This document shows, piece by piece, positions 1,317-10,872 of a stretch of DNA of 64,000 nucleotides. Each line of letters begins with the position of its first letter. Position 1 is the first letter of the stretch. The position numbers and the translations under genes are program-made. The notes under the pieces were generated by a model, which worked only from the letters and a program-made list of their open reading frames with translations, made no database searches and was not told the DNA's origin. The DNA lies in IMG/VR virus record IMGVR_UViG_3300023184_004198, positions 1 to 64,000 of that record; one strand, written 5' to 3'.

Positions 1317-2465
1317 CTATACTTTGAACCAAGTTAGATATTGTTCTATTTTTTTGGTAACACTGGACCAATCTCCCATTGAAGGTTGACGGAATATCCT
1401 TGTGCTAGGATACCAAGGACTTGAGTCTCGGTCTAACATCCAACGCCAATCTGTGGCAAACCACTGTAACATCAACCAGGTAGGTCTTCCCAGTGCACCT
1501 GCTAGATGTGTAATAGCAGTGTCTACGCTAATCACAACATCCAAACAAGTTATCAATGCCGCAGTGTCAGCAAAACTAGCAATGGCTCCTGGGTACATTG
1601 TGACTCCAGCCGCTGCTAGTGCCTGCGATTCTTCATCAGTGGCATCCACCTGCAGGTTGATCCACTCGTATTGCGGATTGTTTTTGACTAACTCCAGCAT
1701 GGTTTCAAATGGCACGCTTTTGTGTTGATTAAGCCAGGCATCTCTACGTCCCGACCATGAAAATCCAACCCGCATGCGTGTTTTAGGACCCATGCGTTGT
1801 AACCAGGCTTTGACATCAGTTTCTTGTGCATTGATATAACTGATAGGACGCGGCAAATTATCTAAAGTAATTCCCAATACTCCAGGAATACTCATGATAG
1901 GAACCCAATAATCAAACTCGGGCGGTTCATCAGTGTATCTGCCAACCCAGTTAATAATACTAGCATTGGCTAACAAAGGAATCATGCCATCCGTGACTTG
2001 AAACAAAATCTTTGCTCCTGCGGCATGCAAGTTAAACAAAAATCTGCAGAACTGTATATTGTCTCCATGTCCCTGTTCACCTATGACCAATATGGTTTTG
2101 TCTTTTAAATCTTGTCCAGTCCAACGAGGTTGAGCATGTTGTGGCAGCGATCCCGCTAGATGTTCATACTGCCAACGTGCTTCGTAGGCCGGCCATCCAC
2201 GAGCATAATCGCCCATGATCAAATAACTCACAGCCAAGTTAAAACGTGCTGTGACATTGTTGGGATCAAGTATGGCAGCATGTTCTAAAAATGGTATGCC
2301 ACGTCTTGGTTGGCCCATTTCTCTCATGACGTTGCCATAGTTGTTGAATGCTGCCGCAGAATCAGGATCTTGACACATGGCCAAAGTATAACACTGCAAT
2401 GCCTGTGCAGGTTGATTGTTGGCACGATATTGGTTGCCTTCTTCAATGAGTTGTGATGAGTCCAT
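1317..2465 (-). CDS. TPR-repeat protein with C-terminal GT-B (GT9-like) glycosyltransferase domain
   Basis: N-terminal TPRs (AAAFNNYGNVMREMG, ARFNLAVSYL), then ILVIGEQGHGDNIQFCRF, VGFSWSG and LDVVISVDTAITHLAGALGRPTW. Confidence 0.85.
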   Translation of the reverse strand: MDSSQLIEEGNQYRANNQPAQALQCYTLAMCQDPDSAAAFNNYGNVMREMGQPRRGIPFLEHAAILDPNNVTARFNLAVSYLIMGDYARGWPAYEARWQYEHLAGSLPQHAQPRWTGQDLKDKTILVIGEQGHGDNIQFCRFLFNLHAAGAKILFQVTDGMIPLLANASIINWVGRYTDEPPEFDYWVPIMSIPGVLGITLDNLPRPISYINAQETDVKAWLQRMGPKTRMRVGFSWSGRRDAWLNQHKSVPFETMLELVKNNPQYEWINLQVDATDEESQALAAAGVTMYPGAIASFADTAALITCLDVVISVDTAITHLAGALGRPTWLMLQWFATDWRWMLDRDSSPWYPSTRIFRQPSMGDWSSVTKKIEQYLTWFKV

Positions 2466-2475: not shown

Positions 2476-2513
2476 CAGTATATACAGTGCGGTTTATTAT
2501 TTTAACTGATCCA

Positions 2514-2519
2514 TAAATA
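2514..2519 (+). promoter_or_regulatory. T4-type late promoter box TAAATA
   Basis: TAAATA upstream of the structured leader and the gene at 2608. Confidence 0.65.
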
Positions 2520-2525
2520 AAAGTC

Positions 2526-2600
2526 AACGCAATTCTGCGTTTTATGCGGCTTAACCCACCGCGTAGCGGCTAGAACCCGCATTGGGCTTCTATAAGGAGA
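2526..2600 (+). ncRNA. Candidate structured 5' leader RNA
   Basis: Stems AACGCA/TGCGTT (2526-2541), ATGCGG/CCGCAT (2544-2582) and CCGC/GCGG (2559-2569). Possible pseudoknot CCCA(2555-58)/TGGG(2583-86) just before SD AAGGAG. Confidence 0.4.
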
Positions 2601-2607
2601 AATCATA

Positions 2608-3408
2608 ATGGGAAGAGCTCTAAAAATTCAAAAAACAAATCCTGCCGGTGGTAATGGAGGTGCTTCAGTAAATGTGGATCAAGGCTTTCCACCTTTTTCA
2701 GCATTGACCAATCCTGAATATAACACACCAGTTCAAACTCTGGATGCAGCACAGTTTTTGGGCGTGGTTGGTGGCAGTTCAACAGACAGCACAGCAAGCA
2801 CAACTTATCCAGAAATAGCCGCAGTGGTCAACATTGCTTTGGCTGACGGTACCAGTACCACTGCTGGTGCAGGACGCATTGTGCGCCAAAAAGGCTCACA
2901 CAAGTTCTTGGTAGAATACACTGCTAGTTCAACCTCAGCAGGCAGTTTTATTGTGGGACAAGCATACAAGATTCTTTCTGTGGGCACCACAACTGACTGG
3001 AATGCTGTGGGTCACGGCGAAGGTTCGGCAGCAGTAGGCGATGAATTTACCGCTACAGCAGCTGGTTCTGGCAATGGCACAGCATACCCAATAGGCGTTT
3101 GCATTTTGTCAAACACAGGTACACCTGCCGCTGGATACATGAGTATTGCTTACAGTGTAGGCGACAGCTCTGCTGTGTATGCCAGTTATATCAGCAACAA
3201 GTGGGTACGTGACTGGTCTGGAATGACCTATGCCACATACGCTGACACCAACTACGGTGTTAACATTCAAAGCGGTGAAAATCAGTATGTTACCAACTTC
3301 TTCACAGACGAAGGCAACGTTACTGTATCTGGTGGCGAAATGGTGGGAACAACCTACACAACCAACGCTACTATTCAATTGGCTCAAATCGCCAACGTTA
3401 CTTCTTAA
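2608..3408 (+). CDS. Virion structural protein, function unknown
   Basis: 266 aa, rich in Gly/Thr/Ala/Ser, good SD, follows a late box in the morphogenesis region. Confidence 0.6.
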   Translation: MGRALKIQKTNPAGGNGGASVNVDQGFPPFSALTNPEYNTPVQTLDAAQFLGVVGGSSTDSTASTTYPEIAAVVNIALADGTSTTAGAGRIVRQKGSHKFLVEYTASSTSAGSFIVGQAYKILSVGTTTDWNAVGHGEGSAAVGDEFTATAAGSGNGTAYPIGVCILSNTGTPAAGYMSIAYSVGDSSAVYASYISNKWVRDWSGMTYATYADTNYGVNIQSGENQYVTNFFTDEGNVTVSGGEMVGTTYTTNATIQLAQIANVTS

Positions 3409-3424
3409 TTTGTAAAGTGATCGG

Positions 3425-3457
3425 ATCCTCCCTGATACATACAGGGAGGATTTTTTT
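3425..3457 (+). terminator. Terminator-like hairpin that also sequesters the next SD
   Basis: ATCCTCCCTG-atacata-CAGGGAGGAT followed by a T run. GGAGG (3445-3449) is in the 3' arm, 8 nt before ATG 3458. Confidence 0.75.
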
Positions 3458-4045
3458 ATGAGTGCAGCATTTGTATTGGGCAACGGTGTCAGCCGACTGG
3501 CAGTGAATTTAAATCAACTAAAGCAACGTGGAAAAATCTACGGATGTAATGCCTTGTACAGAGAATTTGCACCAGATGTGTTGGTCAGCACAGATCGAGG
3601 TATTGCACAAACTATTCAAAATTCTGGATATGCACAAAACAACACAATGTATACCAGAAAACCCTTGCCGGGACTGGGTGCTCGTACAGTGCCACAAAGT
3701 TATTTTGGTTACAGTTCAGGACCTATTGCAGTGGGGTTGGCTGCATTGGACAAACATCTAGCAGTATACCTCATTGGATTTGACATGGGCCCAATCGGCA
3801 ACAACAAGTTCAACAATGTGTATGCAGACACAGAATTTTATAGAAAAAGCATAAGTTTGCCCACATTTACTGGCAACTGGATCAGACAAATTGCAACCAT
3901 TTGTCGAGACTTCTCGGACACCAGTTTTCATCGCGTCATGGGCGATACCACTGCCAGTATTCCTGAACTAAACAATATTCCTAATTTAAAAAACATGCCC
4001 ATGTCAGACTTGCTTGACCGTATAAATAACACAAAGGACCTTTAA
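3458..4045 (+). CDS. GT42/GT29/Maf-like (sialyltransferase-fold) glycosyltransferase-like protein
   Basis: Motifs FVLGNGVSR...IYGCNALY and YSSGPIAVGLA...VYLIGFDM parallel, from memory, the CstII-type GNGPS...RCNQFY and TSG...IYLSGIDF motifs. Confidence 0.55.
   Translation: MSAAFVLGNGVSRLAVNLNQLKQRGKIYGCNALYREFAPDVLVSTDRGIAQTIQNSGYAQNNTMYTRKPLPGLGARTVPQSYFGYSSGPIAVGLAALDKHLAVYLIGFDMGPIGNNKFNNVYADTEFYRKSISLPTFTGNWIRQIATICRDFSDTSFHRVMGDTTASIPELNNIPNLKNMPMSDLLDRINNTKDL
4021..4028 (+). promoter_or_regulatory. Late promoter TATAAATA
   Basis: Exact T4 late consensus, 17 nt before ATG 4046. Confidence 0.7.
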
Positions 4046-5554
4046 ATGTCAACAGTCAAACGAGTCAGTGGCGACTACACACTAGAAACCATAAATGCAG
4101 GTGATTTAGTCACTCTACAAAGTACCAATGTAAACATTGTGGGCAATCTCACAGTGACAGGCAATGCTGTGTTGACTGGAAATATCAATGCCGACAAAAT
4201 TTTTAACGGCACCAGTAGTGTAGAAATTCCCACAATCAATGGCAATATCACATTCAATCCTGGTGGCGTCAGCAATATCATGGTGGTATCCCCTTCTGGT
4301 ACTACCTTTAGTGGTGTGGTAGCATTTACAGGCAATGTAGACGCAGGTAATCTCAACACCACCGGCGGTGTTTATACTGCCAGTGGTACTGGTGCTGGCA
4401 ATGTTTCAATTGTCAACGGCAACATGTTGATTGCCTACAGTTCTAATACTACCAGCAATCAAAACATTAGATTTCAAGATTCGAACATAGCAGTAACTTC
4501 AGTAGGTGCAAACATTGGTGGCATAGAATGGTTTACATCTGACGCCACAGGCGCTGGCGCTAGAATCACAGCAAGAATTCGTGCAGTGTACGAAGACAGT
4601 GATGGCAACGCTAACATTCAAATTCAAACTGGCAGTACCTCAACTCCCACGACAAGAATCACTGTGATTGGTAGTTCAGGCAATGTAGGTATAGCCAATG
4701 TGGCACCGTTGCATGCGTTAGCGGTAACTGGCACAGTGTATGGCTCTAGCACACTTACCGCAGTGGGTAATATCACCGGCGGCAACATTGTCACAGCAGG
4801 ACTTGTGACTGTGACTGGTAATGTAAATGGTGGAAACTTACAAACTGCAGGATTGATCACAGCCACTGGCAACGTCACTGGTGGTAATGTAATCAGTTTG
4901 GGTGCGTTGAGTGCAGGTGCTGCTGGTATAACTGCAACTGGTAATATTCGCGGCGGTAACATTGTCAGTGATGACCAAATTTCAGCCACTGGTAACGTAA
5001 ACGCTGCCAACTTTAATGCTACACAAAACTTCAGTACCACAGGCAATGTACGCAGTGGCACAGTAACAGCATCTGGAAATATTGTTGGATCCAATATTCA
5101 AATAACCGGCAACAGTTACGGCACGGGTATTGGAGTAGAAAACATTGTATGGCAACCAACCACTGTGGCATTTAACAGTGCTGTACAGGCCAACGTTGGT
5201 ACATTAGGCTTCTTTATGCTGGGTGGTTACACTTACAAATTTGAAGCATACTTGCCTATATTACCTGCTGGTGCTACCACAACTGGTTTCAGTACATATT
5301 TTGATGCAGGAACTTGTTATTACACTGTTGAAGCACAAACCACACAAACTTCGGCATTTAGCACATCGACCTCCAACGTTTCGGGCACAGCCGCAGCCAC
5401 TCAAGGCATGACTGGTACCACACCTAGAACAGCAAGAATCACAGGCACTATTTACAGCGCCGGCAATGCCAATGTTGCTATACAAGCACAAACCAGTGCT
5501 GCAAATATCAACATACAAAGTGGCGCATTCCTGACCTACACTAGATTATCCTAA
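4046..5554 (+). CDS. Tail fibre-like protein with GN(I/V)TGGN repeats
   Basis: 502 aa with a central TAxGN(I/V)TGGN(I/V) repeat block and a globular C-terminus. Confidence 0.7.
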   Translation: MSTVKRVSGDYTLETINAGDLVTLQSTNVNIVGNLTVTGNAVLTGNINADKIFNGTSSVEIPTINGNITFNPGGVSNIMVVSPSGTTFSGVVAFTGNVDAGNLNTTGGVYTASGTGAGNVSIVNGNMLIAYSSNTTSNQNIRFQDSNIAVTSVGANIGGIEWFTSDATGAGARITARIRAVYEDSDGNANIQIQTGSTSTPTTRITVIGSSGNVGIANVAPLHALAVTGTVYGSSTLTAVGNITGGNIVTAGLVTVTGNVNGGNLQTAGLITATGNVTGGNVISLGALSAGAAGITATGNIRGGNIVSDDQISATGNVNAANFNATQNFSTTGNVRSGTVTASGNIVGSNIQITGNSYGTGIGVENIVWQPTTVAFNSAVQANVGTLGFFMLGGYTYKFEAYLPILPAGATTTGFSTYFDAGTCYYTVEAQTTQTSAFSTSTSNVSGTAAATQGMTGTTPRTARITGTIYSAGNANVAIQAQTSAANINIQSGAFLTYTRLS

Positions 5555-5604: not shown

Positions 5605-8600
5605 ATGGCACAACAGATTATTGACATTGGTGCTGCTGCGAATGACGGCACTGGTGAACCATTACGCGATGCATTTAACGCTGTAAATGAAAACTTTACT
5701 GAGATTTATACTGCTGGCCCAGTAGGCAGCAATGTCGTCATCTCCGGTAATACCATCACCGTCACTGGTGTCAACAACAACCTAGTGCTCAAAGCCAATG
5801 GCATTGGCAATATTCAAGCAAATAGTTCAATCATGCCCAGTATTGATGCTGTGTATGACATCGGGGCTCCTACTGCAAGAATTGACACTGTTTATGCTGC
5901 ATATTTTGTAGGCAACGGACAAGGCATTACTGGAATTACCACAGCAGGTACCAGCATAAATTCTGGTACATCCAATGTAAAAATTGTCAGTGCAAACGGC
6001 AATGTAACTGTCAGTGTAAATGGCACATCAAATGTGGCTGTGTTTGGCAGCACTGACTCAAATATCAAAGGAAATCTAGCAGTTGGGAATCTTTCAACTG
6101 CAGGACAAATAACTGCCGCCAGCAATATCACTGGTGGTAATATTAGAACTGTTGGCTCAGTCAGCGCAACAGGCAATATCACAGGCAACTATATTTTAGG
6201 TAATGGTGCATTGTTGTCGGGCATTATTACTTCTGTATCTAACATCAACAACGGCAACAGCAACGTAAACATTCAAAATGCAGGCGCCAATGTTACTGTC
6301 AGTGTAAATGGCATAGCAAACACTGTGGTATTTGGTTCTGCGGCTACTACATTCACTGGTAATATTGTTCCTGGTGCCAACAATGTATACACTTTGGGTA
6401 CTGCTACTCAAAGATTTAAAAACATTTATCTGAGTGGTAACACAATCACTCTTGGTGATTCAACATTTACCGCCAACGCTGATTCTGTTATTTTAACCAA
6501 CCCTGTTGGTGGAACTTTTACCATACAAGGAACCAGTCAACTCAGTGGATCGTCTATTGTAAATGGTCTCAGTCAAATGGCCATTCCTGTGGCCAATGGC
6601 AATGTACAGGTAAGTGTGGGAACCACTGCCAATGCATTGGTGATCAGTGCCACCAACATGCAAAGCATTGGTAACATATTGGCCAACAATCAAATCAGTG
6701 CTGCTGGTAACATTGTGACCAGCGGTTTCTTTGTGGGTAACTTTGTGGGCAATGTCACTGGCAACCTTGTTGTGCCTGGCGTTAACACACAGATTCTTTA
6801 CAACAACTTTGGCAATGCTGGAGCCAGTGCTGCCTTTAGATTTGACAGCACCTCCAATGTGTTAACACTCACAGGTAACGCACAAGTTGGTAACGTTCGT
6901 ACTGTGGGACAAGTCAGTGCCACTGGCAATGTAACTGGCAACTACTTTATTGGTAACGGTTCCTTGTTGACTGGCATTGCTGCCACTTACAGCAATGCCA
7001 ATGTGGCAACATATTTGGCCAGTGGAACCAACACATCAAATATCATTACCACTGCCAATATTGCTGGTGGAAACTTATCTTTAACTGGTGCATTCTCTCC
7101 CAGTTCGTTTAGTTCTGCAGGCAATGTAACTGGTGGCAACCTAAGAACAGCAGGAGTAGTAAGTTCAGCAGGCAACATCATAACTGACGGATACTTTGTT
7201 GGTACGTTTGCTGGCAACATCACAGGCAATTTGACAGTACCTGGATCAAATACACAAGTTATTTTTAACAACGCTGGCAATGCTGGCGCTAGTGCTGGAT
7301 TTAGATTTGACACAGCAGGGCCTAACTTGCTCACAGTCAATGGCAACGTACAGACCATTGGCCTGTTGGCATCTAGCAATGTGTCAGCAGCCGGCAATAT
7401 ATTGGCAAACAATGTTGTCATAACTGGCCTGGTCAGTGCGGTAGGAAGCATATCAACCACAGGCAATATCACTGGCGGAAATATCAACACTGCTGGTCAA
7501 GTCACAGCCACCGCCAATGTAACAGGTGGCAATTTGATCACTGCTGGCACATTGTCTGTGGGCAGTACTGTTAGCGCAACAGGCAATATCACTGGCAGTA
7601 ATATTATTACTACAGGGTCAGTAAGTGCTGGCGGCGATGTCAGTTTACTAGGCAATGTGGATGGCGGCAATATTCGCACTGTTGGGCAAGTCACTGCCAC
7701 AGGTAATATCACCGGCGGCAACATTCTGTTTGGCATATTCAAATTACTTAATAATGGTGATGCACAAGTTGGTAATTTAACTGTCAGCAATGGTCCAGGT
7801 ATTGGCAACCTTCTTGTTGGTAATATTATAAGTGCAACTGGCAACATACTGACCGGCGGTAACGTCAGCGCAACTGCCAACGTTGTTGGCGGTAACTTGC
7901 TGGCTGGATCAGGCGTTATCACCACAACTGGCAACATCACAGGCGGCAATATATTGGCTGGTTCAGGCGTTATTAGTACTGGTGGCAACGTCAATGGAGC
8001 AATATTCAACGGCAATGTGGCATTTGGTACCGGCACAGTGTCGGGCACTGGCAACATCACTGGTGGTAACGTATTAGTTTCAGGTGTGTTGCTATCTACC
8101 AACACAGTTTCAGCAGCCGGTAATGTAATTGGCGGCAACATCAACACAGGTGGAAATATTTCTACTTCAGGCAATGTGATTGCCCAAGACATCAGAGTTG
8201 GTCCAGGCATAACTGGCGGTACCATAAGTGCATTGGGCAATATCACCAGTGCCAACTCATTGAATGCGGTTAGTTTGAGTTTGAGTGGTAATGTTGTATC
8301 ACCACTCAATATCACAGGCAATGTAACTAGTGGCAATATTGTTGCTGTGGCAGCAGTCAATGCTGTTTCAATTAGTGCAAGTGGCAACATCACCGGTGGT
8401 AACATACTTGGCGGAGCCAACGTTAATGCCACAACTCACACAGGTACCACCGTTTCAGTAACTGCTAATATCACAGGCGGTAACTTGAATGCTGCGGGAT
8501 TGAGTCTGAGTGGCAATGTTGTGTCACCACTCAATGTCACAGGTACCGTAACTGGCGGAAATATCATTAGCGTGGCAGCAATGTCAGCAGCCACAATGAC

Positions 8601-10872
8601 CACCACAGGAAATGCCGTAGTCGGCGGGGACTTGATTGTCAATGGTAATTTGACATATCTCAACATATCATCGTTCAATGTTGAAGATCCCATAATTGGT
8701 CTTGGGCGTGGACCCAACAACGCACCACTGATCTCTGATGACAACAAAGATCGCGGTACTGATTTATTTTATTTTGACACAACAGAAAAACAAGCCTTTG
8801 TTGGATTCAAAGACTCAACTGGTAAAATGTTTGCTGCAACTGATGTCAGCATCGCCAACGAAGTGGTCACAGTCAACAGTTATGGAAGTTTTGTAGTTGG
8901 GCAGTTAGAAGGTGCCACAGTAAGCACCACAGGCAATATAACAGGCAGTTACTTCATTGGCAACGGATCTACGTTAACTGGTGTAGTGGCCACAGCAATT
9001 GGTGTGTTGCCAAGTTTGAGTGTGACTGGCAATATCATCACAGGCAACTTGAATTCGTTAGGACAAGTAAGTGCAGTGGCCAATGTTGTTGGCGGTAATA
9101 TCAGTACCGCAGGATTGATCACAGCCACAGGTAATATCACAGGTGGCAACATTGCCACAGGTGGACAGATCACCGCAACCGGCAATATCACAGGTGGTAA
9201 CATCATGGGTGGTGCCAACGTCAATGCCACAACCCACACAGGTACCACAGTTTCAGTAACTGGTAATATAACTGGTGGTAATATTTTAGGTGGTGCTAAC
9301 GTTAATGCCACAACCCACACAGGTACCACAGTTTCAGTAACTGCTAATATCACTGGTGGAAATTTAAATTCTGCTGGATTGAGTTTGAGTGGCAATGTTG
9401 TATCACCATTCAATGTCACTGGTAATATCACCGGCGGCAATGTTATAACTCCAGGACTAATTACTTCAACTGGAAATATCACCGGCGGCAATATTATTTC
9501 TATTGCGGTAGTCAGTACAGTATCTATTGTTGCTACAGCAAACGTCTCTGGAGGCAACATTACCACAGCAGGACAAGTAAGTGCCACTGGCAACATAACT
9601 GGTGGCAATGTCATTACAACAGGTTTGGCCACGGTAACAGGTAATGTCATTGGTGGCAATGTTACCACTGTAGGACAAGTAAGCGCGACGGCTAATATCA
9701 CCGGTGGCAATTTAATCACTGGTGGCTTGGCCACAGTAACTGGTAATATCACAGGTGGCAACATCGCCACAGCCGGTTTAGTAACAGCAACTGGTAATAT
9801 TGTGTCTGGTGCACTGATTTCGGCCGCAGGCAATGTGTCAGCCGCAGGCAATGTATTTGCTCAATACATTTTTGGTAACTTGGTTGGCAGCATTTCTCTG
9901 TCTAGTTCTTCTAACAGTCAAATATTGTTCAACAGTGCAGGAATTATTACAGGCGATACAGGACTGACATTTGATTATGCAGCCAACGCACTCACTGTAG
10001 GCGGCGCCATAACAACTACCAATGGTGGAAGTTTAACAGTTGGTGGTGGTGCTACAATTACTGGAAACATTTCTACCACAATTGGCAACATTGGTGGCGG
10101 CAATATTTTGGCCACAACATTGGTCAGTGCTGGTGGCAATGTCACTGGTGGAAACATTACCACAGCAGGTTTAATAACTGCTACTGGAAATGTCACTGGT
10201 GGCAATGTTAATTCTGGCGGTTTAGCAAGCATAACTGGAAATGTCATTGGTGGTAACATATCCACAGCAGGTTTAATAACTGCCACTGGAAATGTCATCG
10301 GTGGCAATATCATCACATCTGCATTGGTACAAGGACTCACTGTAAGTGCTACTGCAAACGTGGTTGGTGGTAATGTCAGCACAGCCGGATTGATTACGGC
10401 CACTGGTAACATCACCGGTGGTAATTTAAACACTGGCGCACAAGTTGTAGCAACTGGTAATATCACTGGCGGCAACATCAATGCAATAGGACTGATTTCA
10501 GCAGTTGGCAACATTGTTGGTGGTAACTTGTCGGGTACCAGCATTGTTGGTACGTTGACCACAGCCGCACAAAACAACATCACCAGTGTGGGCACACTAA
10601 GCAGTCTTAATGTTACGGCTAATATTGTTGGCGGCAACATTAACACAGCAGGACTAGTATCGGCCACAGGCAACATCGTTAGCGGAAACTTAAACGCAGT
10701 GGGATTGAGTCTAAGTGGCAATGTAATCAGCGCAATCAATTTGACCGCAAACATAACAACAACTGCCAATGTCAACGCCAATAATATCAACGCTACAAGC
10801 ACGATAAATATCAACAACGCTAGGGTAGCAACCATAGATGACGCGGCTGCACTGGCAATAGCATTAGGATAA
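5605..10872 (+). CDS. Long fibre protein with gp9/gp10-like baseplate-attachment N-terminus and extensive GNITGGN repeats
   Basis: N-terminal IDIGAAANDGTGEPLRDAFNAVNENF resembles the T4 gp9/gp10 N-terminal motif. More than 20 NITG units in 1755 aa. Confidence 0.8.
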   Translation: MAQQIIDIGAAANDGTGEPLRDAFNAVNENFTEIYTAGPVGSNVVISGNTITVTGVNNNLVLKANGIGNIQANSSIMPSIDAVYDIGAPTARIDTVYAAYFVGNGQGITGITTAGTSINSGTSNVKIVSANGNVTVSVNGTSNVAVFGSTDSNIKGNLAVGNLSTAGQITAASNITGGNIRTVGSVSATGNITGNYILGNGALLSGIITSVSNINNGNSNVNIQNAGANVTVSVNGIANTVVFGSAATTFTGNIVPGANNVYTLGTATQRFKNIYLSGNTITLGDSTFTANADSVILTNPVGGTFTIQGTSQLSGSSIVNGLSQMAIPVANGNVQVSVGTTANALVISATNMQSIGNILANNQISAAGNIVTSGFFVGNFVGNVTGNLVVPGVNTQILYNNFGNAGASAAFRFDSTSNVLTLTGNAQVGNVRTVGQVSATGNVTGNYFIGNGSLLTGIAATYSNANVATYLASGTNTSNIITTANIAGGNLSLTGAFSPSSFSSAGNVTGGNLRTAGVVSSAGNIITDGYFVGTFAGNITGNLTVPGSNTQVIFNNAGNAGASAGFRFDTAGPNLLTVNGNVQTIGLLASSNVSAAGNILANNVVITGLVSAVGSISTTGNITGGNINTAGQVTATANVTGGNLITAGTLSVGSTVSATGNITGSNIITTGSVSAGGDVSLLGNVDGGNIRTVGQVTATGNITGGNILFGIFKLLNNGDAQVGNLTVSNGPGIGNLLVGNIISATGNILTGGNVSATANVVGGNLLAGSGVITTTGNITGGNILAGSGVISTGGNVNGAIFNGNVAFGTGTVSGTGNITGGNVLVSGVLLSTNTVSAAGNVIGGNINTGGNISTSGNVIAQDIRVGPGITGGTISALGNITSANSLNAVSLSLSGNVVSPLNITGNVTSGNIVAVAAVNAVSISASGNITGGNILGGANVNATTHTGTTVSVTANITGGNLNAAGLSLSGNVVSPLNVTGTVTGGNIISVAAMSAATMTTTGNAVVGGDLIVNGNLTYLNISSFNVEDPIIGLGRGPNNAPLISDDNKDRGTDLFYFDTTEKQAFVGFKDSTGKMFAATDVSIANEVVTVNSYGSFVVGQLEGATVSTTGNITGSYFIGNGSTLTGVVATAIGVLPSLSVTGNIITGNLNSLGQVSAVANVVGGNISTAGLITATGNITGGNIATGGQITATGNITGGNIMGGANVNATTHTGTTVSVTGNITGGNILGGANVNATTHTGTTVSVTANITGGNLNSAGLSLSGNVVSPFNVTGNITGGNVITPGLITSTGNITGGNIISIAVVSTVSIVATANVSGGNITTAGQVSATGNITGGNVITTGLATVTGNVIGGNVTTVGQVSATANITGGNLITGGLATVTGNITGGNIATAGLVTATGNIVSGALISAAGNVSAAGNVFAQYIFGNLVGSISLSSSSNSQILFNSAGIITGDTGLTFDYAANALTVGGAITTTNGGSLTVGGGATITGNISTTIGNIGGGNILATTLVSAGGNVTGGNITTAGLITATGNVTGGNVNSGGLASITGNVIGGNISTAGLITATGNVIGGNIITSALVQGLTVSATANVVGGNVSTAGLITATGNITGGNLNTGAQVVATGNITGGNINAIGLISAVGNIVGGNLSGTSIVGTLTTAAQNNITSVGTLSSLNVTANIVGGNINTAGLVSATGNIVSGNLNAVGLSLSGNVISAINLTANITTTANVNANNINATSTININNARVATIDDAAALAIALG
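9223..9343 (+). repeat. Exact 40-bp direct repeat with 81-nt period inside the fibre gene
   Basis: AATGCCACAACCCACACAGGTACCACAGTTTCAGTAACTG at 9223-9262 and 9304-9343. Confidence 0.9.

What the first reader, a model, noticed from the sequence alone, without database searches (positions are those of the whole stretch)
2526..2600. Compact structured leader with possible pseudoknot abutting the SD
Seen: a GC-rich island in an AT-rich spacer between a late box and ATG 2608, with three stems and a loop (CCCA) complementary to TGGG just upstream of AAGGAG. An alternative hairpin, AGAACCC/GGGCTTCT, is mutually exclusive with the main stem. Inference: a cis-regulatory RNA (translational switch or protein-binding operator) of a type I cannot name.
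Basis: partly seen in the sequence, partly recalled or inferred. Interest (0 to 1): 0.6.

Follow-up and report, generated by a model that had tools for sequence, protein, structure and literature searches.

The report
Known freshwater-2 phage leader RNA
The flagged stretch is a canonical copy of the already catalogued 'freshwater-2' RNA motif: a three-hairpin leader, apparently at the very start of the late mRNA for a probable abundant virion protein of uncultured giant T4-like water phages. Its function is still unknown, and comparison with relatives does not support the proposed pseudoknot or switch hairpin.

Summary
Window 2525-2610 (+) matches Rfam RF02980 (freshwater-2 RNA) over the whole model at 69.7 bits (gathering score 49.9, E 1e-10). 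It is the only copy in the 212.6-kb viral record. The linker element occurs only in a sub-clade.

New context found here:
- Every leader examined lies 4-10 nt behind a T4-type late-promoter box.
- Every leader precedes one unnamed protein family (N-terminus MGR[P/A][L/I]K, tandem SH3/Tudor-like barrels).
- That gene usually follows the major capsid gene directly.
- The only cultured homologue found (Agrobacterium phage Atu_ph07 gp498) is a heavily detected virion protein, and its gene lacks the RNA.

Best guess, which is inferred and not shown: P1 is a 5'-terminal protective hairpin, and the invariant P2 with the P3 loop is a protein-binding operator, probably bound by the gene's own product. 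The kind of element is already known. Its mechanism is still open.

The parts
2512..2519 (+). T4-type late-promoter-like box CATAAATA. The predicted transcript start is about 2525.
   Evidence: Seen in the sequence. An NNTAAATA box was found in 101 of 101 unique leaders, and in the 97 with a recognisable P1 the hairpin begins 4-10 nt (two outliers: 15 and 18 nt) behind it. The start site is inferred from knowledge of T4 late promoters (box at about -13 to -6). It was not measured.
2525..2610 (+). Full match to Rfam RF02980, freshwater-2 RNA
   Evidence: cmscan gives 69.7 bits against a gathering score of 49.9, E 1.1e-10, model positions 1-84 of 84. It is the only copy in the 212,614-base record.
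2526..2541 (+). P1 hairpin (6 bp, loop AUUC). Its sequence is free to vary, and it should lie at the 5' end of the mRNA.
   Evidence: Three pairs covary in alignment A4. Many unrelated stem sequences occur across the family. RNAalifold predicts it independently.
2543..2565 (+). P2 hairpin: UAUGCGG/CCGCGUA with an invariant U.G third pair. The loop is 2550-2558 and ends in the C-run CCCA (2555-2558).
   Evidence: 100% paired in 77 gene-ascertained leaders. Six pairs are invariant, and the sixth pair occurs as GC 47, AU 25, UA 5. The C-run ends 0-2 nt from the 3' end of the loop in 146 of 151 unique leaders.
2566..2580 (+). P3 hairpin (4 bp) directly abutting P2, with the conserved loop CUAGAAC (2570-2576).
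   Evidence: 100% paired, and all four pairs covary with up to five pair types. Natural loop variants are CUGGAAC, CUAAAAC and CUGAAAC. A sister class has an 8-nt loop, NNUAGAAC.
2581..2591 (+). Sub-clade-specific linker element AUUGGGCUUCU.
   Evidence: Conserved as AUNGGRCUUCU in the window's clade only. Pseudoknot and alternative-hairpin tests. Function unexplained.
2594..2599 (+). Shine-Dalgarno AAGGAG, 8 nt before the ATG. It is unpaired in the consensus fold.
2608..3408 (+). Gene for a 266-aa protein (P0001) of an unnamed family with N-terminus MGR[P/A][L/I]K. It is probably an abundant head-module virion protein. UGGG 2609-2612 is complementary to the P2-loop C-run.
   Evidence: - The ORF and its translation.
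- No Pfam or PHROG match.
- 1693 metagenomic relatives.
- The gene follows gp23 in 63 of 63 loci that hold gp23 and in a 354-kb relative.
- Homology to Atu_ph07 gp498: hhalign 98.1%. That protein is a virion protein with 23 peptides and 75.5% coverage.
3423..3453 (+). Intrinsic-terminator-like hairpin (12 bp plus a T run) closing the one-gene transcription unit.

Best explanation
Window 2525-2610 is a canonical member of the known RNA family freshwater-2 (Rfam RF02980). It is the 5' leader of a one-gene late transcription unit of an uncultured jumbo T4-like phage.

Layout:
- A T4-type late box ends 6 nt before P1, so the mRNA should begin with P1 at its extreme 5' end.
- P2 and P3 follow as two directly abutting hairpins.
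- An unpaired linker, a strong Shine-Dalgarno and the ATG of a 266-aa protein come next, and a terminator closes the unit.
- The protein belongs to an unnamed family that normally sits right behind the major capsid gene. Its cultured homologue is a heavily detected virion protein.

Most likely mode of action (inferred, not shown):
- P1, whose sequence varies freely, is a 5'-terminal hairpin that protects the mRNA.
- The sequence-invariant P2 helix (with its invariant U.G pair and right-justified C-run in the loop) and the conserved P3 loop (YURRAAC) form a specific protein-binding operator.
- The strict one-to-one link between the RNA and this one protein family, paralogues included, makes the gene's own product the most likely binder. 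Free, unassembled protein would then lower its own translation.
- The ribosome-binding site is open in the consensus fold, so the default state is ON.

My confidence in each layer: membership of freshwater-2, 0.98. Leader of a late mRNA for a head-module virion protein, about 0.8. Protein-binding operator, about 0.5. Autogenous control, about 0.3-0.35.
For: Shown:
- Full-length RF02980 match above the gathering score.
- P1, P2 and P3 are supported by covariation in 77 leaders ascertained through the protein: 168 double-change cells against 46.6 in shuffles, and P3 100% paired with all pairs covarying. RNAalifold finds the same three stems and leaves the SD and AUG unpaired.
- A late box in 101 of 101 unique leaders, with P1 starting 4-10 nt after it in nearly all.
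- A terminator behind the gene.
- All 151 unique leaders precede an ORF beginning MG(R/N)(P/A) or MAR(P/A). (Four rows tallied as MGLL are the linker mini-ORF; the real start follows it.) Codon choice varies, so this conservation is at the protein level.
- Contigs with two motif copies carry them in front of two paralogues.
- In 63 of 63 loci that contain a gp23 homologue, it lies upstream on the same strand, often directly adjacent. The gene order is portal, protease, gp23, this gene.
- The family is homologous to Atu_ph07 gp498 (hhalign 98.1%, E 1e-13). That protein was found in all 13 gel slices with 23 peptides and 75.5% coverage (PMC6102473 Table S5).

Inferred:
- An invariant helix sequence beside freely covarying P1 and P3 stems points to sequence-specific recognition.
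- Exclusive linkage to one gene family is the pattern seen in autogenous operators such as T4 genes 32 and 43 and ribosomal-protein leaders (my knowledge).
- The protein core is a pair of small SH3/Tudor/KOW-like barrels. That fold class often binds nucleic acids, but the matches are weak (Z at most 4.6).
Against: - There is no experimental datum of any kind. No RNA-seq run could be listed, so the transcript start is a prediction.
- Nothing shows that the protein binds RNA. The fold matches are generic and below the level that indicates function.
- The two Atu_ph07 homologues have no freshwater-2 RNA, so the protein family does not need the RNA.
- No conserved structure that would occlude the SD or AUG gained covariation support, so how repression would work is not explained.
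- A strong promoter, strong SD and terminator also fit a purely constitutive, high-output design.
- P2 and P3-loop invariance is partly inflated by my pattern-based sampling. It does hold in the protein-ascertained set.
Confidence: 0.35

Rival explanations
1. Passive high-expression leader. The three hairpins only protect the 5' end of the late mRNA from 5'-end-dependent decay and keep the ribosome-binding site open. No regulator is involved.
For: - P1 should lie at the predicted 5' end.
- The SD and AUG are unpaired in the consensus fold.
- The SD is strong, the gene has its own terminator, and the cultured homologue is a very abundant virion protein.
- 5'-terminal stabiliser hairpins are well known, for example in ompA and T4 gene 32 mRNA (my knowledge).
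Against: - A stabiliser needs structure, not sequence. Yet six of seven P2 pairs, including a U.G pair, and the P3 loop are invariant, while the P1 and P3 stems drift freely.
- A general enhancer would be expected in front of other late genes such as gp23. Instead the motif occurs once in 212 kb, and always before this one family.
Confidence: 0.25
2. Operator for a different trans-acting factor: a dedicated phage late-gene regulator, or a conserved host component such as a ribosomal protein, the 30S subunit or an RNase.
For: The same conservation pattern as for the main explanation. The motif is conserved across phages whose downstream proteins have diverged to about 25-30% identity, which a universally conserved partner would explain.
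Against: - It does not explain why only this gene family carries the motif, paralogues included.
- No candidate regulator gene was identified. The only constant neighbours are gp23 and a 195-aa protein of unknown function.
Confidence: 0.2
3. A conformational switch (riboswitch or thermosensor) alternates between P3 and the UAGAACCC/GGG-C-UUCUA hairpin, and/or a pseudoknot forms between the P2-loop C-run and a downstream UGGG (in the linker at 2583-2586, or at the start codon at 2609-2612) to gate translation.
For: - In the window the alternative hairpin is 2.5 kcal/mol more stable than P3.
- The C-run is right-justified in the P2 loop, as in an H-type pseudoknot.
- A sliding scan of the last four loop bases peaks sharply on U-GGG of the start codon: 85% of cells pair, and 56 of 101 leaders form a full 4 bp.
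- One lineage shows an A-U to G-C double change with the linker.
- GCC-containing loops are enriched in natural AUGGC leaders: 5 of 19 against 2 of 126.
Against: - The alternative hairpin has no compensatory change and does no better than shuffles. Natural loop variants break it.
- The linker pseudoknot does no better than shuffles in close relatives (70.9% against 71.4%). It has counter-examples such as L223, and most of the family lacks the linker element.
- For the start-codon pseudoknot the target is fixed by the Met-Gly codons. In 19 natural Ala-2 leaders the loop fits its own start better in 3, worse in 9, and equally in 7.
- There is no multi-stem junction with conserved unpaired bases of the kind ligand pockets have.
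Confidence: 0.12

Closest known systems
Rfam RF02980, freshwater-2 RNA motif (Weinberg et al. 2017, NAR 45:10811, PMC5737381; described in its supplement, which I could not read)
   Same: Everything tested matches: the full-length covariance-model match, the three hairpins, the conserved P2 sequence and P3 loop, the position directly before an SD and ATG, and a phage/aquatic metagenome origin.
   Different: Nothing structural differs. Added here: the late-promoter box, the single downstream protein family, its place behind gp23, and a sister class with an 8-nt P3 loop. As I recall the family's public description, it says only that the downstream genes lack known domains and that phages are the likely carriers.
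T4 gene 32 mRNA leader (5' pseudoknot plus unstructured operator, autogenous translational repression)
   Same: A structured element at the 5' end of a T4-like phage mRNA, linked to a single gene. It would work the same way if free protein feeds back on translation.
   Different: It is a different structure with no sequence relation. Gene 32 is not a late structural gene, and its pseudoknot is experimentally established, whereas here no pseudoknot is supported. This is a resemblance in proposed logic only.
Autogenous ribosomal-protein leaders, and the T4 gene 43 and regA operators
   Same: A cis element found only in front of the gene or operon whose product binds it. The binding-site sequence is conserved while the flanking helices vary.
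   Different: Those operators usually overlap or occlude the SD or AUG. Here the conserved part ends 13 nt before the SD, and no occluding structure is supported.
5'-terminal stabiliser hairpins (ompA 5' UTR and similar)
   Same: A hairpin within a few nucleotides of the predicted transcript start, whose sequence is free to vary (P1).
   Different: P2 and P3 carry invariant sequence that a stabiliser does not need.

Membership tests
Rfam RF02980 freshwater-2 RNA | Covariance-model score at or above the curated gathering score (49.9 bits) | tested here: met
   69.7 bits, E 1.1e-10, model positions 1-84 of 84, not truncated.
Rfam RF02980 freshwater-2 RNA | Three tandem hairpins (6 bp, 7 bp and 4 bp in the model), with P2 and P3 abutting | tested here: met
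   P1 2526-2541, P2 2543-2565, P3 2566-2580. Covariation in relatives. Independent RNAalifold consensus.
Rfam RF02980 freshwater-2 RNA | Conserved P2 sequence UAUGCNG/CNGCGUA and P3 loop UAGAAC | tested here: met
   The window has UAUGCGG/CCGCGUA and CUAGAAC.
Rfam RF02980 freshwater-2 RNA | Lies directly upstream of a protein-coding gene, with AAGGAG and AUG at the 3' end of the model | tested here: met
   SD 2594-2599, ATG 2608, ORF of 266 aa.
Rfam RF02980 freshwater-2 RNA | Aquatic/freshwater metagenomic, probably phage, origin (as I recall the family description) | tested here: inconclusive
   The window is an IMG/VR virus record with T4-type capsid genes, and all relatives come from viral or metagenome contigs. 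I did not look up the sample habitats.
H-type pseudoknot translational operator (T4 gene 32 type) | A second helix between the hairpin loop and a downstream segment, maintained in relatives | tested here: inconclusive
   Loop with linker: 70.9% of cells pair, against 71.4% in shuffles, with one lineage-level double change and with counter-examples. Loop with start codon: 87% pair, but the target is invariant, and natural AUGGC variants fit their own start better in 3, worse in 9 and equally in 7.
Riboswitch / two-state RNA switch | Mutually exclusive alternative helix conserved by covariation | tested here: not met
   The alternative hairpin has 0 compensatory changes, 500 of 500 shuffles score as well, and natural P3-loop variants create A.C mismatches in it.
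Riboswitch / two-state RNA switch | Ligand binding | not testable with these tools
   Needs in-line probing or a binding assay.
Autogenous translational operator | The cis element is linked exclusively to the gene of its binder | tested here: met
   151 of 151 unique leaders precede the same protein family. Contigs with two copies carry them before two paralogues.
Autogenous translational operator | The gene product binds the leader RNA and lowers translation | not testable with these tools
   Needs gel shift, toeprinting or a reporter assay. The fold evidence is only a generic SH3/Tudor/KOW-like barrel.

The most novel reading that the evidence does not exclude
Freshwater-2 is an assembly-coupled autogenous operator. 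The abundant head-module protein, through its conserved basic N-terminus and SH3/KOW-like barrels, binds the invariant P2/P3 element of its own late mRNA when it is not taken up by capsids. Binding stabilises a 3-4 bp H-type pseudoknot between the right-justified C-run of the P2 loop and the U-GGG of the start codon, which shuts initiation. In the window's sub-clade, the linker copy AUNGGR acts as a competing decoy. This would be the first translational feedback loop described for a late structural gene of a T4-like jumbo phage, and it would assign a function to an orphan Rfam motif.
Probability: 0.12. Interest if true: 0.6.

Novelty: already known. Interest (0 to 1): 0.3.

Why it matters
The element itself is not new. 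It is a canonical member of an RNA family described in 2017.

What this analysis adds is context that makes the orphan motif testable:
- It appears to mark the 5' end of a late mRNA.
- It is tied to a single, very widespread but unnamed protein family: 1693 relatives in metagenomes, and most likely a major virion component of uncultured jumbo T4-like phages.
- Its conservation pattern points to a specific binding partner.

If the binder is the gene's own product, this would be a case of translational feedback on a phage structural gene.

For the scan, the lesson is that a reader working from sequence alone found a genuine conserved RNA and drew its three stems correctly. The extra pseudoknot and switch features it added were over-reading.

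Tried and rejected
- **Thermodynamic significance.** Fold z-scores of -0.75 and -1.23 give no evidence either way.
Rejected as a family feature.
No covariation.
- **Start-codon pseudoknot (my own idea).**
  - The sliding scan gave a striking peak, but the target is invariant.
  - I fetched natural AUGGC leaders with a looser pattern. Most of those hits were chance and were filtered out. The 19 real ones do not support co-adaptation.
- **P3 loop as an anticodon-like or T-loop-like motif, and kissing between loops.** Considered by eye only. The 8-nt loop class and the variable P1 and P2 loops give no consistent pairing, so I dropped it.
- **Mini-ORF in the linker (AUN GGR CUU CUN UAA).** It has an AUG in only 4 leaders, no SD in front of it, and the stop is not always in frame. 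Left unexplained.
- **Naming the protein.**
  - Pfam and PHROGs gave nothing.
  - tblastn against 50,697 phage records found nothing for three family members and one weak Atu_ph07 hit.
  - A PDB sequence profile gave nothing.
  - Foldseek against PDB gave nothing, and VIA-align reached Z at most 4.6.
  - The protein atlas gave nothing.
- **Resemblance of the motif I(I/V)RQ(K/R)G(S/T)K(F/Y) to ribosomal protein bL27.** I recalled this from memory, and the PDB profile search did not bear it out.
- **The motif in cultured phages.** blastn with leaders of three variant classes found no copy of the motif. RF02980 scored below its cut-off in Atu_ph07, XbC2 and Kaldavass.
- **RNA-seq.** No run could be listed.
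- **Not used.** The large representative-protein search and complex prediction. No claim in this report rests on them.

Full report
**1. What is in the sequence**

The 142-base spacer 2466-2607 lies between two diverging genes. One is a minus-strand gene (1317-2465) for a TPR plus glycosyltransferase-9-like protein. The other is a plus-strand ORF, 2608-3408.

- CATAAATA at 2512-2519.
- Three hairpins: P1 2526-2541, P2 2543-2565 and P3 2566-2580.
- CCCA at 2555-2558 in the P2 loop, UGGG at 2583-2586, AAGGAG at 2594-2599 and ATG at 2608.

The structured part has 52% G+C (63% in P2-P3), against 27% in the rest of the spacer.

Single-sequence folding is not significantly better than shuffles, with z = -0.75 and -1.23. 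Thermodynamics alone therefore proves nothing.

**2. Identification**

A scan of Rfam 15 gives a full-length match to RF02980, freshwater-2 RNA (type Cis-reg), at 2525-2610. The score is 69.7 bits against a gathering score of 49.9, with E = 1.1e-10.
- It is the only family above threshold in the 64-kb window.
- It is the only copy in the whole 212,614-base IMG/VR virus record, which CheckV estimates at 61% complete.

The family was published among the 224 candidate RNAs of Weinberg et al. 2017 (PMC5737381). The main text does not mention it, and the supplement is not held. What I say about its published description comes from memory of the Rfam entry.

**3. The phage**

The window encodes a T4-type major capsid protein at 57-1253 (Pfam Gp23, E 3e-96). 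Its nearest cultured relatives, at about 71% DNA identity over part of that gene, are the 367-kb jumbo phages Xanthomonas XbC2 and Erwinia Kaldavass.

A 354-kb metagenomic relative has the gene order portal, prohead protease, a 362-aa gene of unknown function, gp23, (TPR/GT9 on the other strand), this gene, a 195-aa gene, a 495-aa gene and a giant gene of at least 2135 aa.

**4. Relatives of the leader**

- Searching viral contigs with the downstream protein gave 32 loci. Of these, 31 carried the motif by a strict pattern, and the 32nd (L017) carries a 3-bp P3 variant.
- A profile search gave 80 more loci, all with the motif.
- A DNA pattern that I mistyped by one N fetched 111 contigs of a sister class, in which the P3 loop is 8 nt (NNUAGAAC).
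- In all I collected 151 unique leaders.

**5. The three stems are real**

I used 77 distinct leaders ascertained through the protein, so they are not biased by an RNA pattern.
- P3 is paired in 100% of cells and all four pairs covary, with up to five pair types.
- P2 is paired in 100%. Six pairs are invariant, including a U.G third pair, and the sixth pair occurs as GC 47, AU 25 and UA 5.
- P1 is 86% paired, with three covarying pairs.
- Overall there are 168 double-change cells, against 46.6 expected from shuffles (0 of 500 shuffles reach the observed value). Sliding the partners by one to three columns drops pairing from 91% to 29-51%.

RNAalifold predicts the same three stems on its own and leaves the SD and AUG unpaired. 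Across the wider family, P1 has dozens of unrelated stem sequences.

**6.

CCCA/UGGG can pair in the window (-4.1 kcal/mol as a bare duplex).
- In close relatives only the two central C-G pairs are constant.
- 70.9% of cells pair, which equals the shuffled expectation of 71.4%.
- One lineage shows an A-U to G-C double change (CCCG with CGGA). However, leaders such as L223 combine CCCA with CGGA, and all four bases occur in front of the GG.
- Across the family only 31.5% of cells pair, because the linker element AUNGGRCUUCU is confined to the window's sub-clade.

The pseudoknot is therefore not a family feature, and it is at best marginal in this clade.

**7.

UAGAACCC with GGG-C-UUCUA is 2.5 kcal/mol more stable than P3 in the window, and single-sequence folding picks it.
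- In the 77 relatives it has no compensatory change, and every one of 500 shuffles does as well.
- Its upper pairs are broken wherever the P3 stem has drifted.
- Natural P3-loop variants (CUAAAAC, CUGAAAC) put A.C mismatches into it.

Evolution has maintained P3, not this helix.

**8. A second pseudoknot candidate, tested and left open**

The C-run of the P2 loop ends 0-2 nt from the 3' side of the loop in 146 of 151 leaders, although loop length ranges from 4 to 14 nt. That is the geometry of an H-type pseudoknot.
- I slid the last four loop bases along everything downstream. This gives one sharp peak, on U-GGG of the AUG-GGN start: 85% of cells pair, and 56 of 101 leaders form a full 4 bp. 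The SD and linker reach at most 45%.
- The target is fixed by the Met-Gly codons, so covariation cannot be read there.
- I therefore fetched natural leaders whose second codon is Ala (AUGGC) and obtained 19 unique ones. Their loops fit their own start better than AUGGG in 3 cases, worse in 9 and equally in 7. GCC-containing loops are nevertheless enriched, 5 of 19 against 2 of 126.

I score this as inconclusive. It may be no more than complementarity between two independently conserved short runs.

**9. Promoter and transcription unit**

- All 101 unique leaders of the first set have an NNTAAATA box. In the 97 with a recognisable P1, the hairpin begins 4-10 nt behind the box (two outliers at 15 and 18 nt); in the window it begins 6 nt behind it.
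- In T4 the late promoter TATAAATA lies at about -13 to -6 (my knowledge). On that basis the transcript should start at about 2525, with P1 at its very 5' end.
- A 12-bp terminator-like hairpin with a T run follows the gene at 3423-3453.
- The start site is an inference. No RNA run could be listed for this sequence.

**10. The gene behind the RNA**

- Every leader precedes an ORF beginning MG(R/N)(P/A)(L/I/V)K or MAR(P/A). Codons vary synonymously, so the conservation is at the protein level.
- The proteins range from 127 to 466 aa. They share the N-terminal peptide and a core with the motif I(I/V)RQ(K/R)G..(F/Y).V.
- No Pfam or PHROG family matches. The family has 1693 metagenomic relatives, all unnamed.
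- AlphaFold models give pLDDT 77 for the window protein and 88 for a 135-aa member. They show small SH3/Tudor/KOW-like barrels.
- PDB matches are weak and generic (Z at most 4.6). BFVD matches are only to uncharacterised phage proteins, including one from Atu_ph07.
- In 63 of 63 loci that contain a gp23 homologue, that gene lies upstream on the same strand, most often directly adjacent. A homologue of the 195-aa protein follows in 50 of 54 loci.
- The family profile matches Agrobacterium jumbo phage Atu_ph07 gp498 over residues 1-110 (hhalign 98.1%, E 1.2e-13). In that phage's virion proteome, CDS 498 (35.16 kDa) was found in all 13 gel slices with 23 unique peptides and 75.5% coverage. Those are the highest values in the part of Table S5 that I read (PMC6102473).
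- That gene has a GATAAATA box but no freshwater-2 RNA. A second Atu_ph07 paralogue exists.

The protein is therefore most likely an abundant, head-module virion component, perhaps a decoration or surface-fibre protein. That last step is my inference.

**11. How it probably works**

Three patterns bear on mechanism.
- P1 and P3 keep their structure but not their sequence. P2 keeps its sequence, and the P3 loop and the P2-loop C-run are conserved. This pattern points to a specific partner rather than to a mere stabilising fold.
- The RNA is found only in front of this one protein family, once or twice per genome, and before each paralogue when there are two. That is the signature of autogenous operators.
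- The ribosome-binding site is open in the consensus fold.

My best reading is as follows. P1 protects the 5' end. P2 and P3 are a protein-binding operator, most likely for the gene's own product, which would couple synthesis to consumption by assembling capsids.

I put about 0.5 on 'protein-binding operator' and about 0.3-0.35 on 'autogenous'.

The rivals are a passive stabiliser or enhancer (0.25), another trans factor (0.2) and a conformational or pseudoknot switch (0.12). None can be settled without experiments.

**12. Cultured phages**

- blastn of leaders from three variant classes against 50,697 GenBank phage records found no copy of the motif.
- RF02980 scores at most 22.6 bits in Atu_ph07, XbC2 and Kaldavass.

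Within these limits, the family still has no cultured carrier.

**13. Verdict**

The element is real, conserved and structured, but it is an already described RNA family. The mechanism remains unknown.

What is new here:
- The late-promoter context.
- The single associated protein family and its likely virion role.
- A sister class with an 8-nt P3 loop.
- A negative or inconclusive test of three candidate extra helices.

Noticed in passing
window 2581-2591, and the same place in L074, L161, L173, L197, L356: The sub-clade linker element AUNGGRCUUCU varies only at positions 3, 6 and 12, which looks like codon third positions. In four unique leaders it starts with AUG and reads M-G-L-L-stop, with the UAA overlapping the Shine-Dalgarno. 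No SD precedes it, and the stop is not always in frame. In L074 the element (AUGGGAC) matches the consensus start of the family (AUGGGAC; L074's own gene begins AUGGGUC).
   Followed up: partly
window 2527-2499, minus strand: A sigma-70-like promoter (TTGACT, 17 nt, TAAAAT; 10 of 12 matches) points at the divergent TPR/GT9 gene (1317-2465). Its -35 hexamer is the reverse complement of the bases just before and at the start of P1. The conserved TTGTCAAC in front of P1 in relatives reads TTGACA on the other strand.
   Followed up: no
window 1317-2465 (-); 16 of the 111 pattern-derived loci: A TPR plus glycosyltransferase-9-like gene is inserted on the opposite strand between gp23 and the leader in this sub-clade. 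In most other loci the leader follows gp23 directly.
   Followed up: partly
window 3458-4045, 4046-5554, 5605-10872: The gene order behind the motif gene is conserved: a 195-aa protein (phrog_30607, unknown function; present downstream in 50 of 54 loci), then a 502-aa and a 1755-aa protein with faint beta-solenoid (FapA) matches. These may be fibre or surface proteins.
   Followed up: partly
L034, L096, L106, L121, L123: These contigs carry two freshwater-2 copies, each in front of a different paralogue. One paralogue is about 297 aa and starts MG(N/R)(A/P)LKIRK. The other is 420-463 aa and starts MGRPLKI(A/S)K.
   Followed up: partly
proteins P0134, P0141, P0169 (relatives of L103:4051-4455): JGI names three 134-136-aa family members 'selenocysteine-specific translation elongation factor'. 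This is probably a spurious transfer from a small beta-barrel domain, and no Pfam domain is on record for them.
   Followed up: no
window 4022-4028, 10804-10810, 25554, 32132, 38681, 47299: Seven of the eight ATAAATA boxes in the window are on the plus strand, and one lies 18 nt before ATG 4046. The total count is no more than chance (8 against 8.2 expected), so the box alone does not define late promoters here.
   Followed up: no
L145 (Atu_ph07 360882-361862) and W01:337360-337614: Atu_ph07 has two members of the protein family. gp498 is among the best-detected virion proteins but is annotated as hypothetical. Its leader has a GATAAATA box and AAGGAG but no structured RNA.
   Followed up: yes
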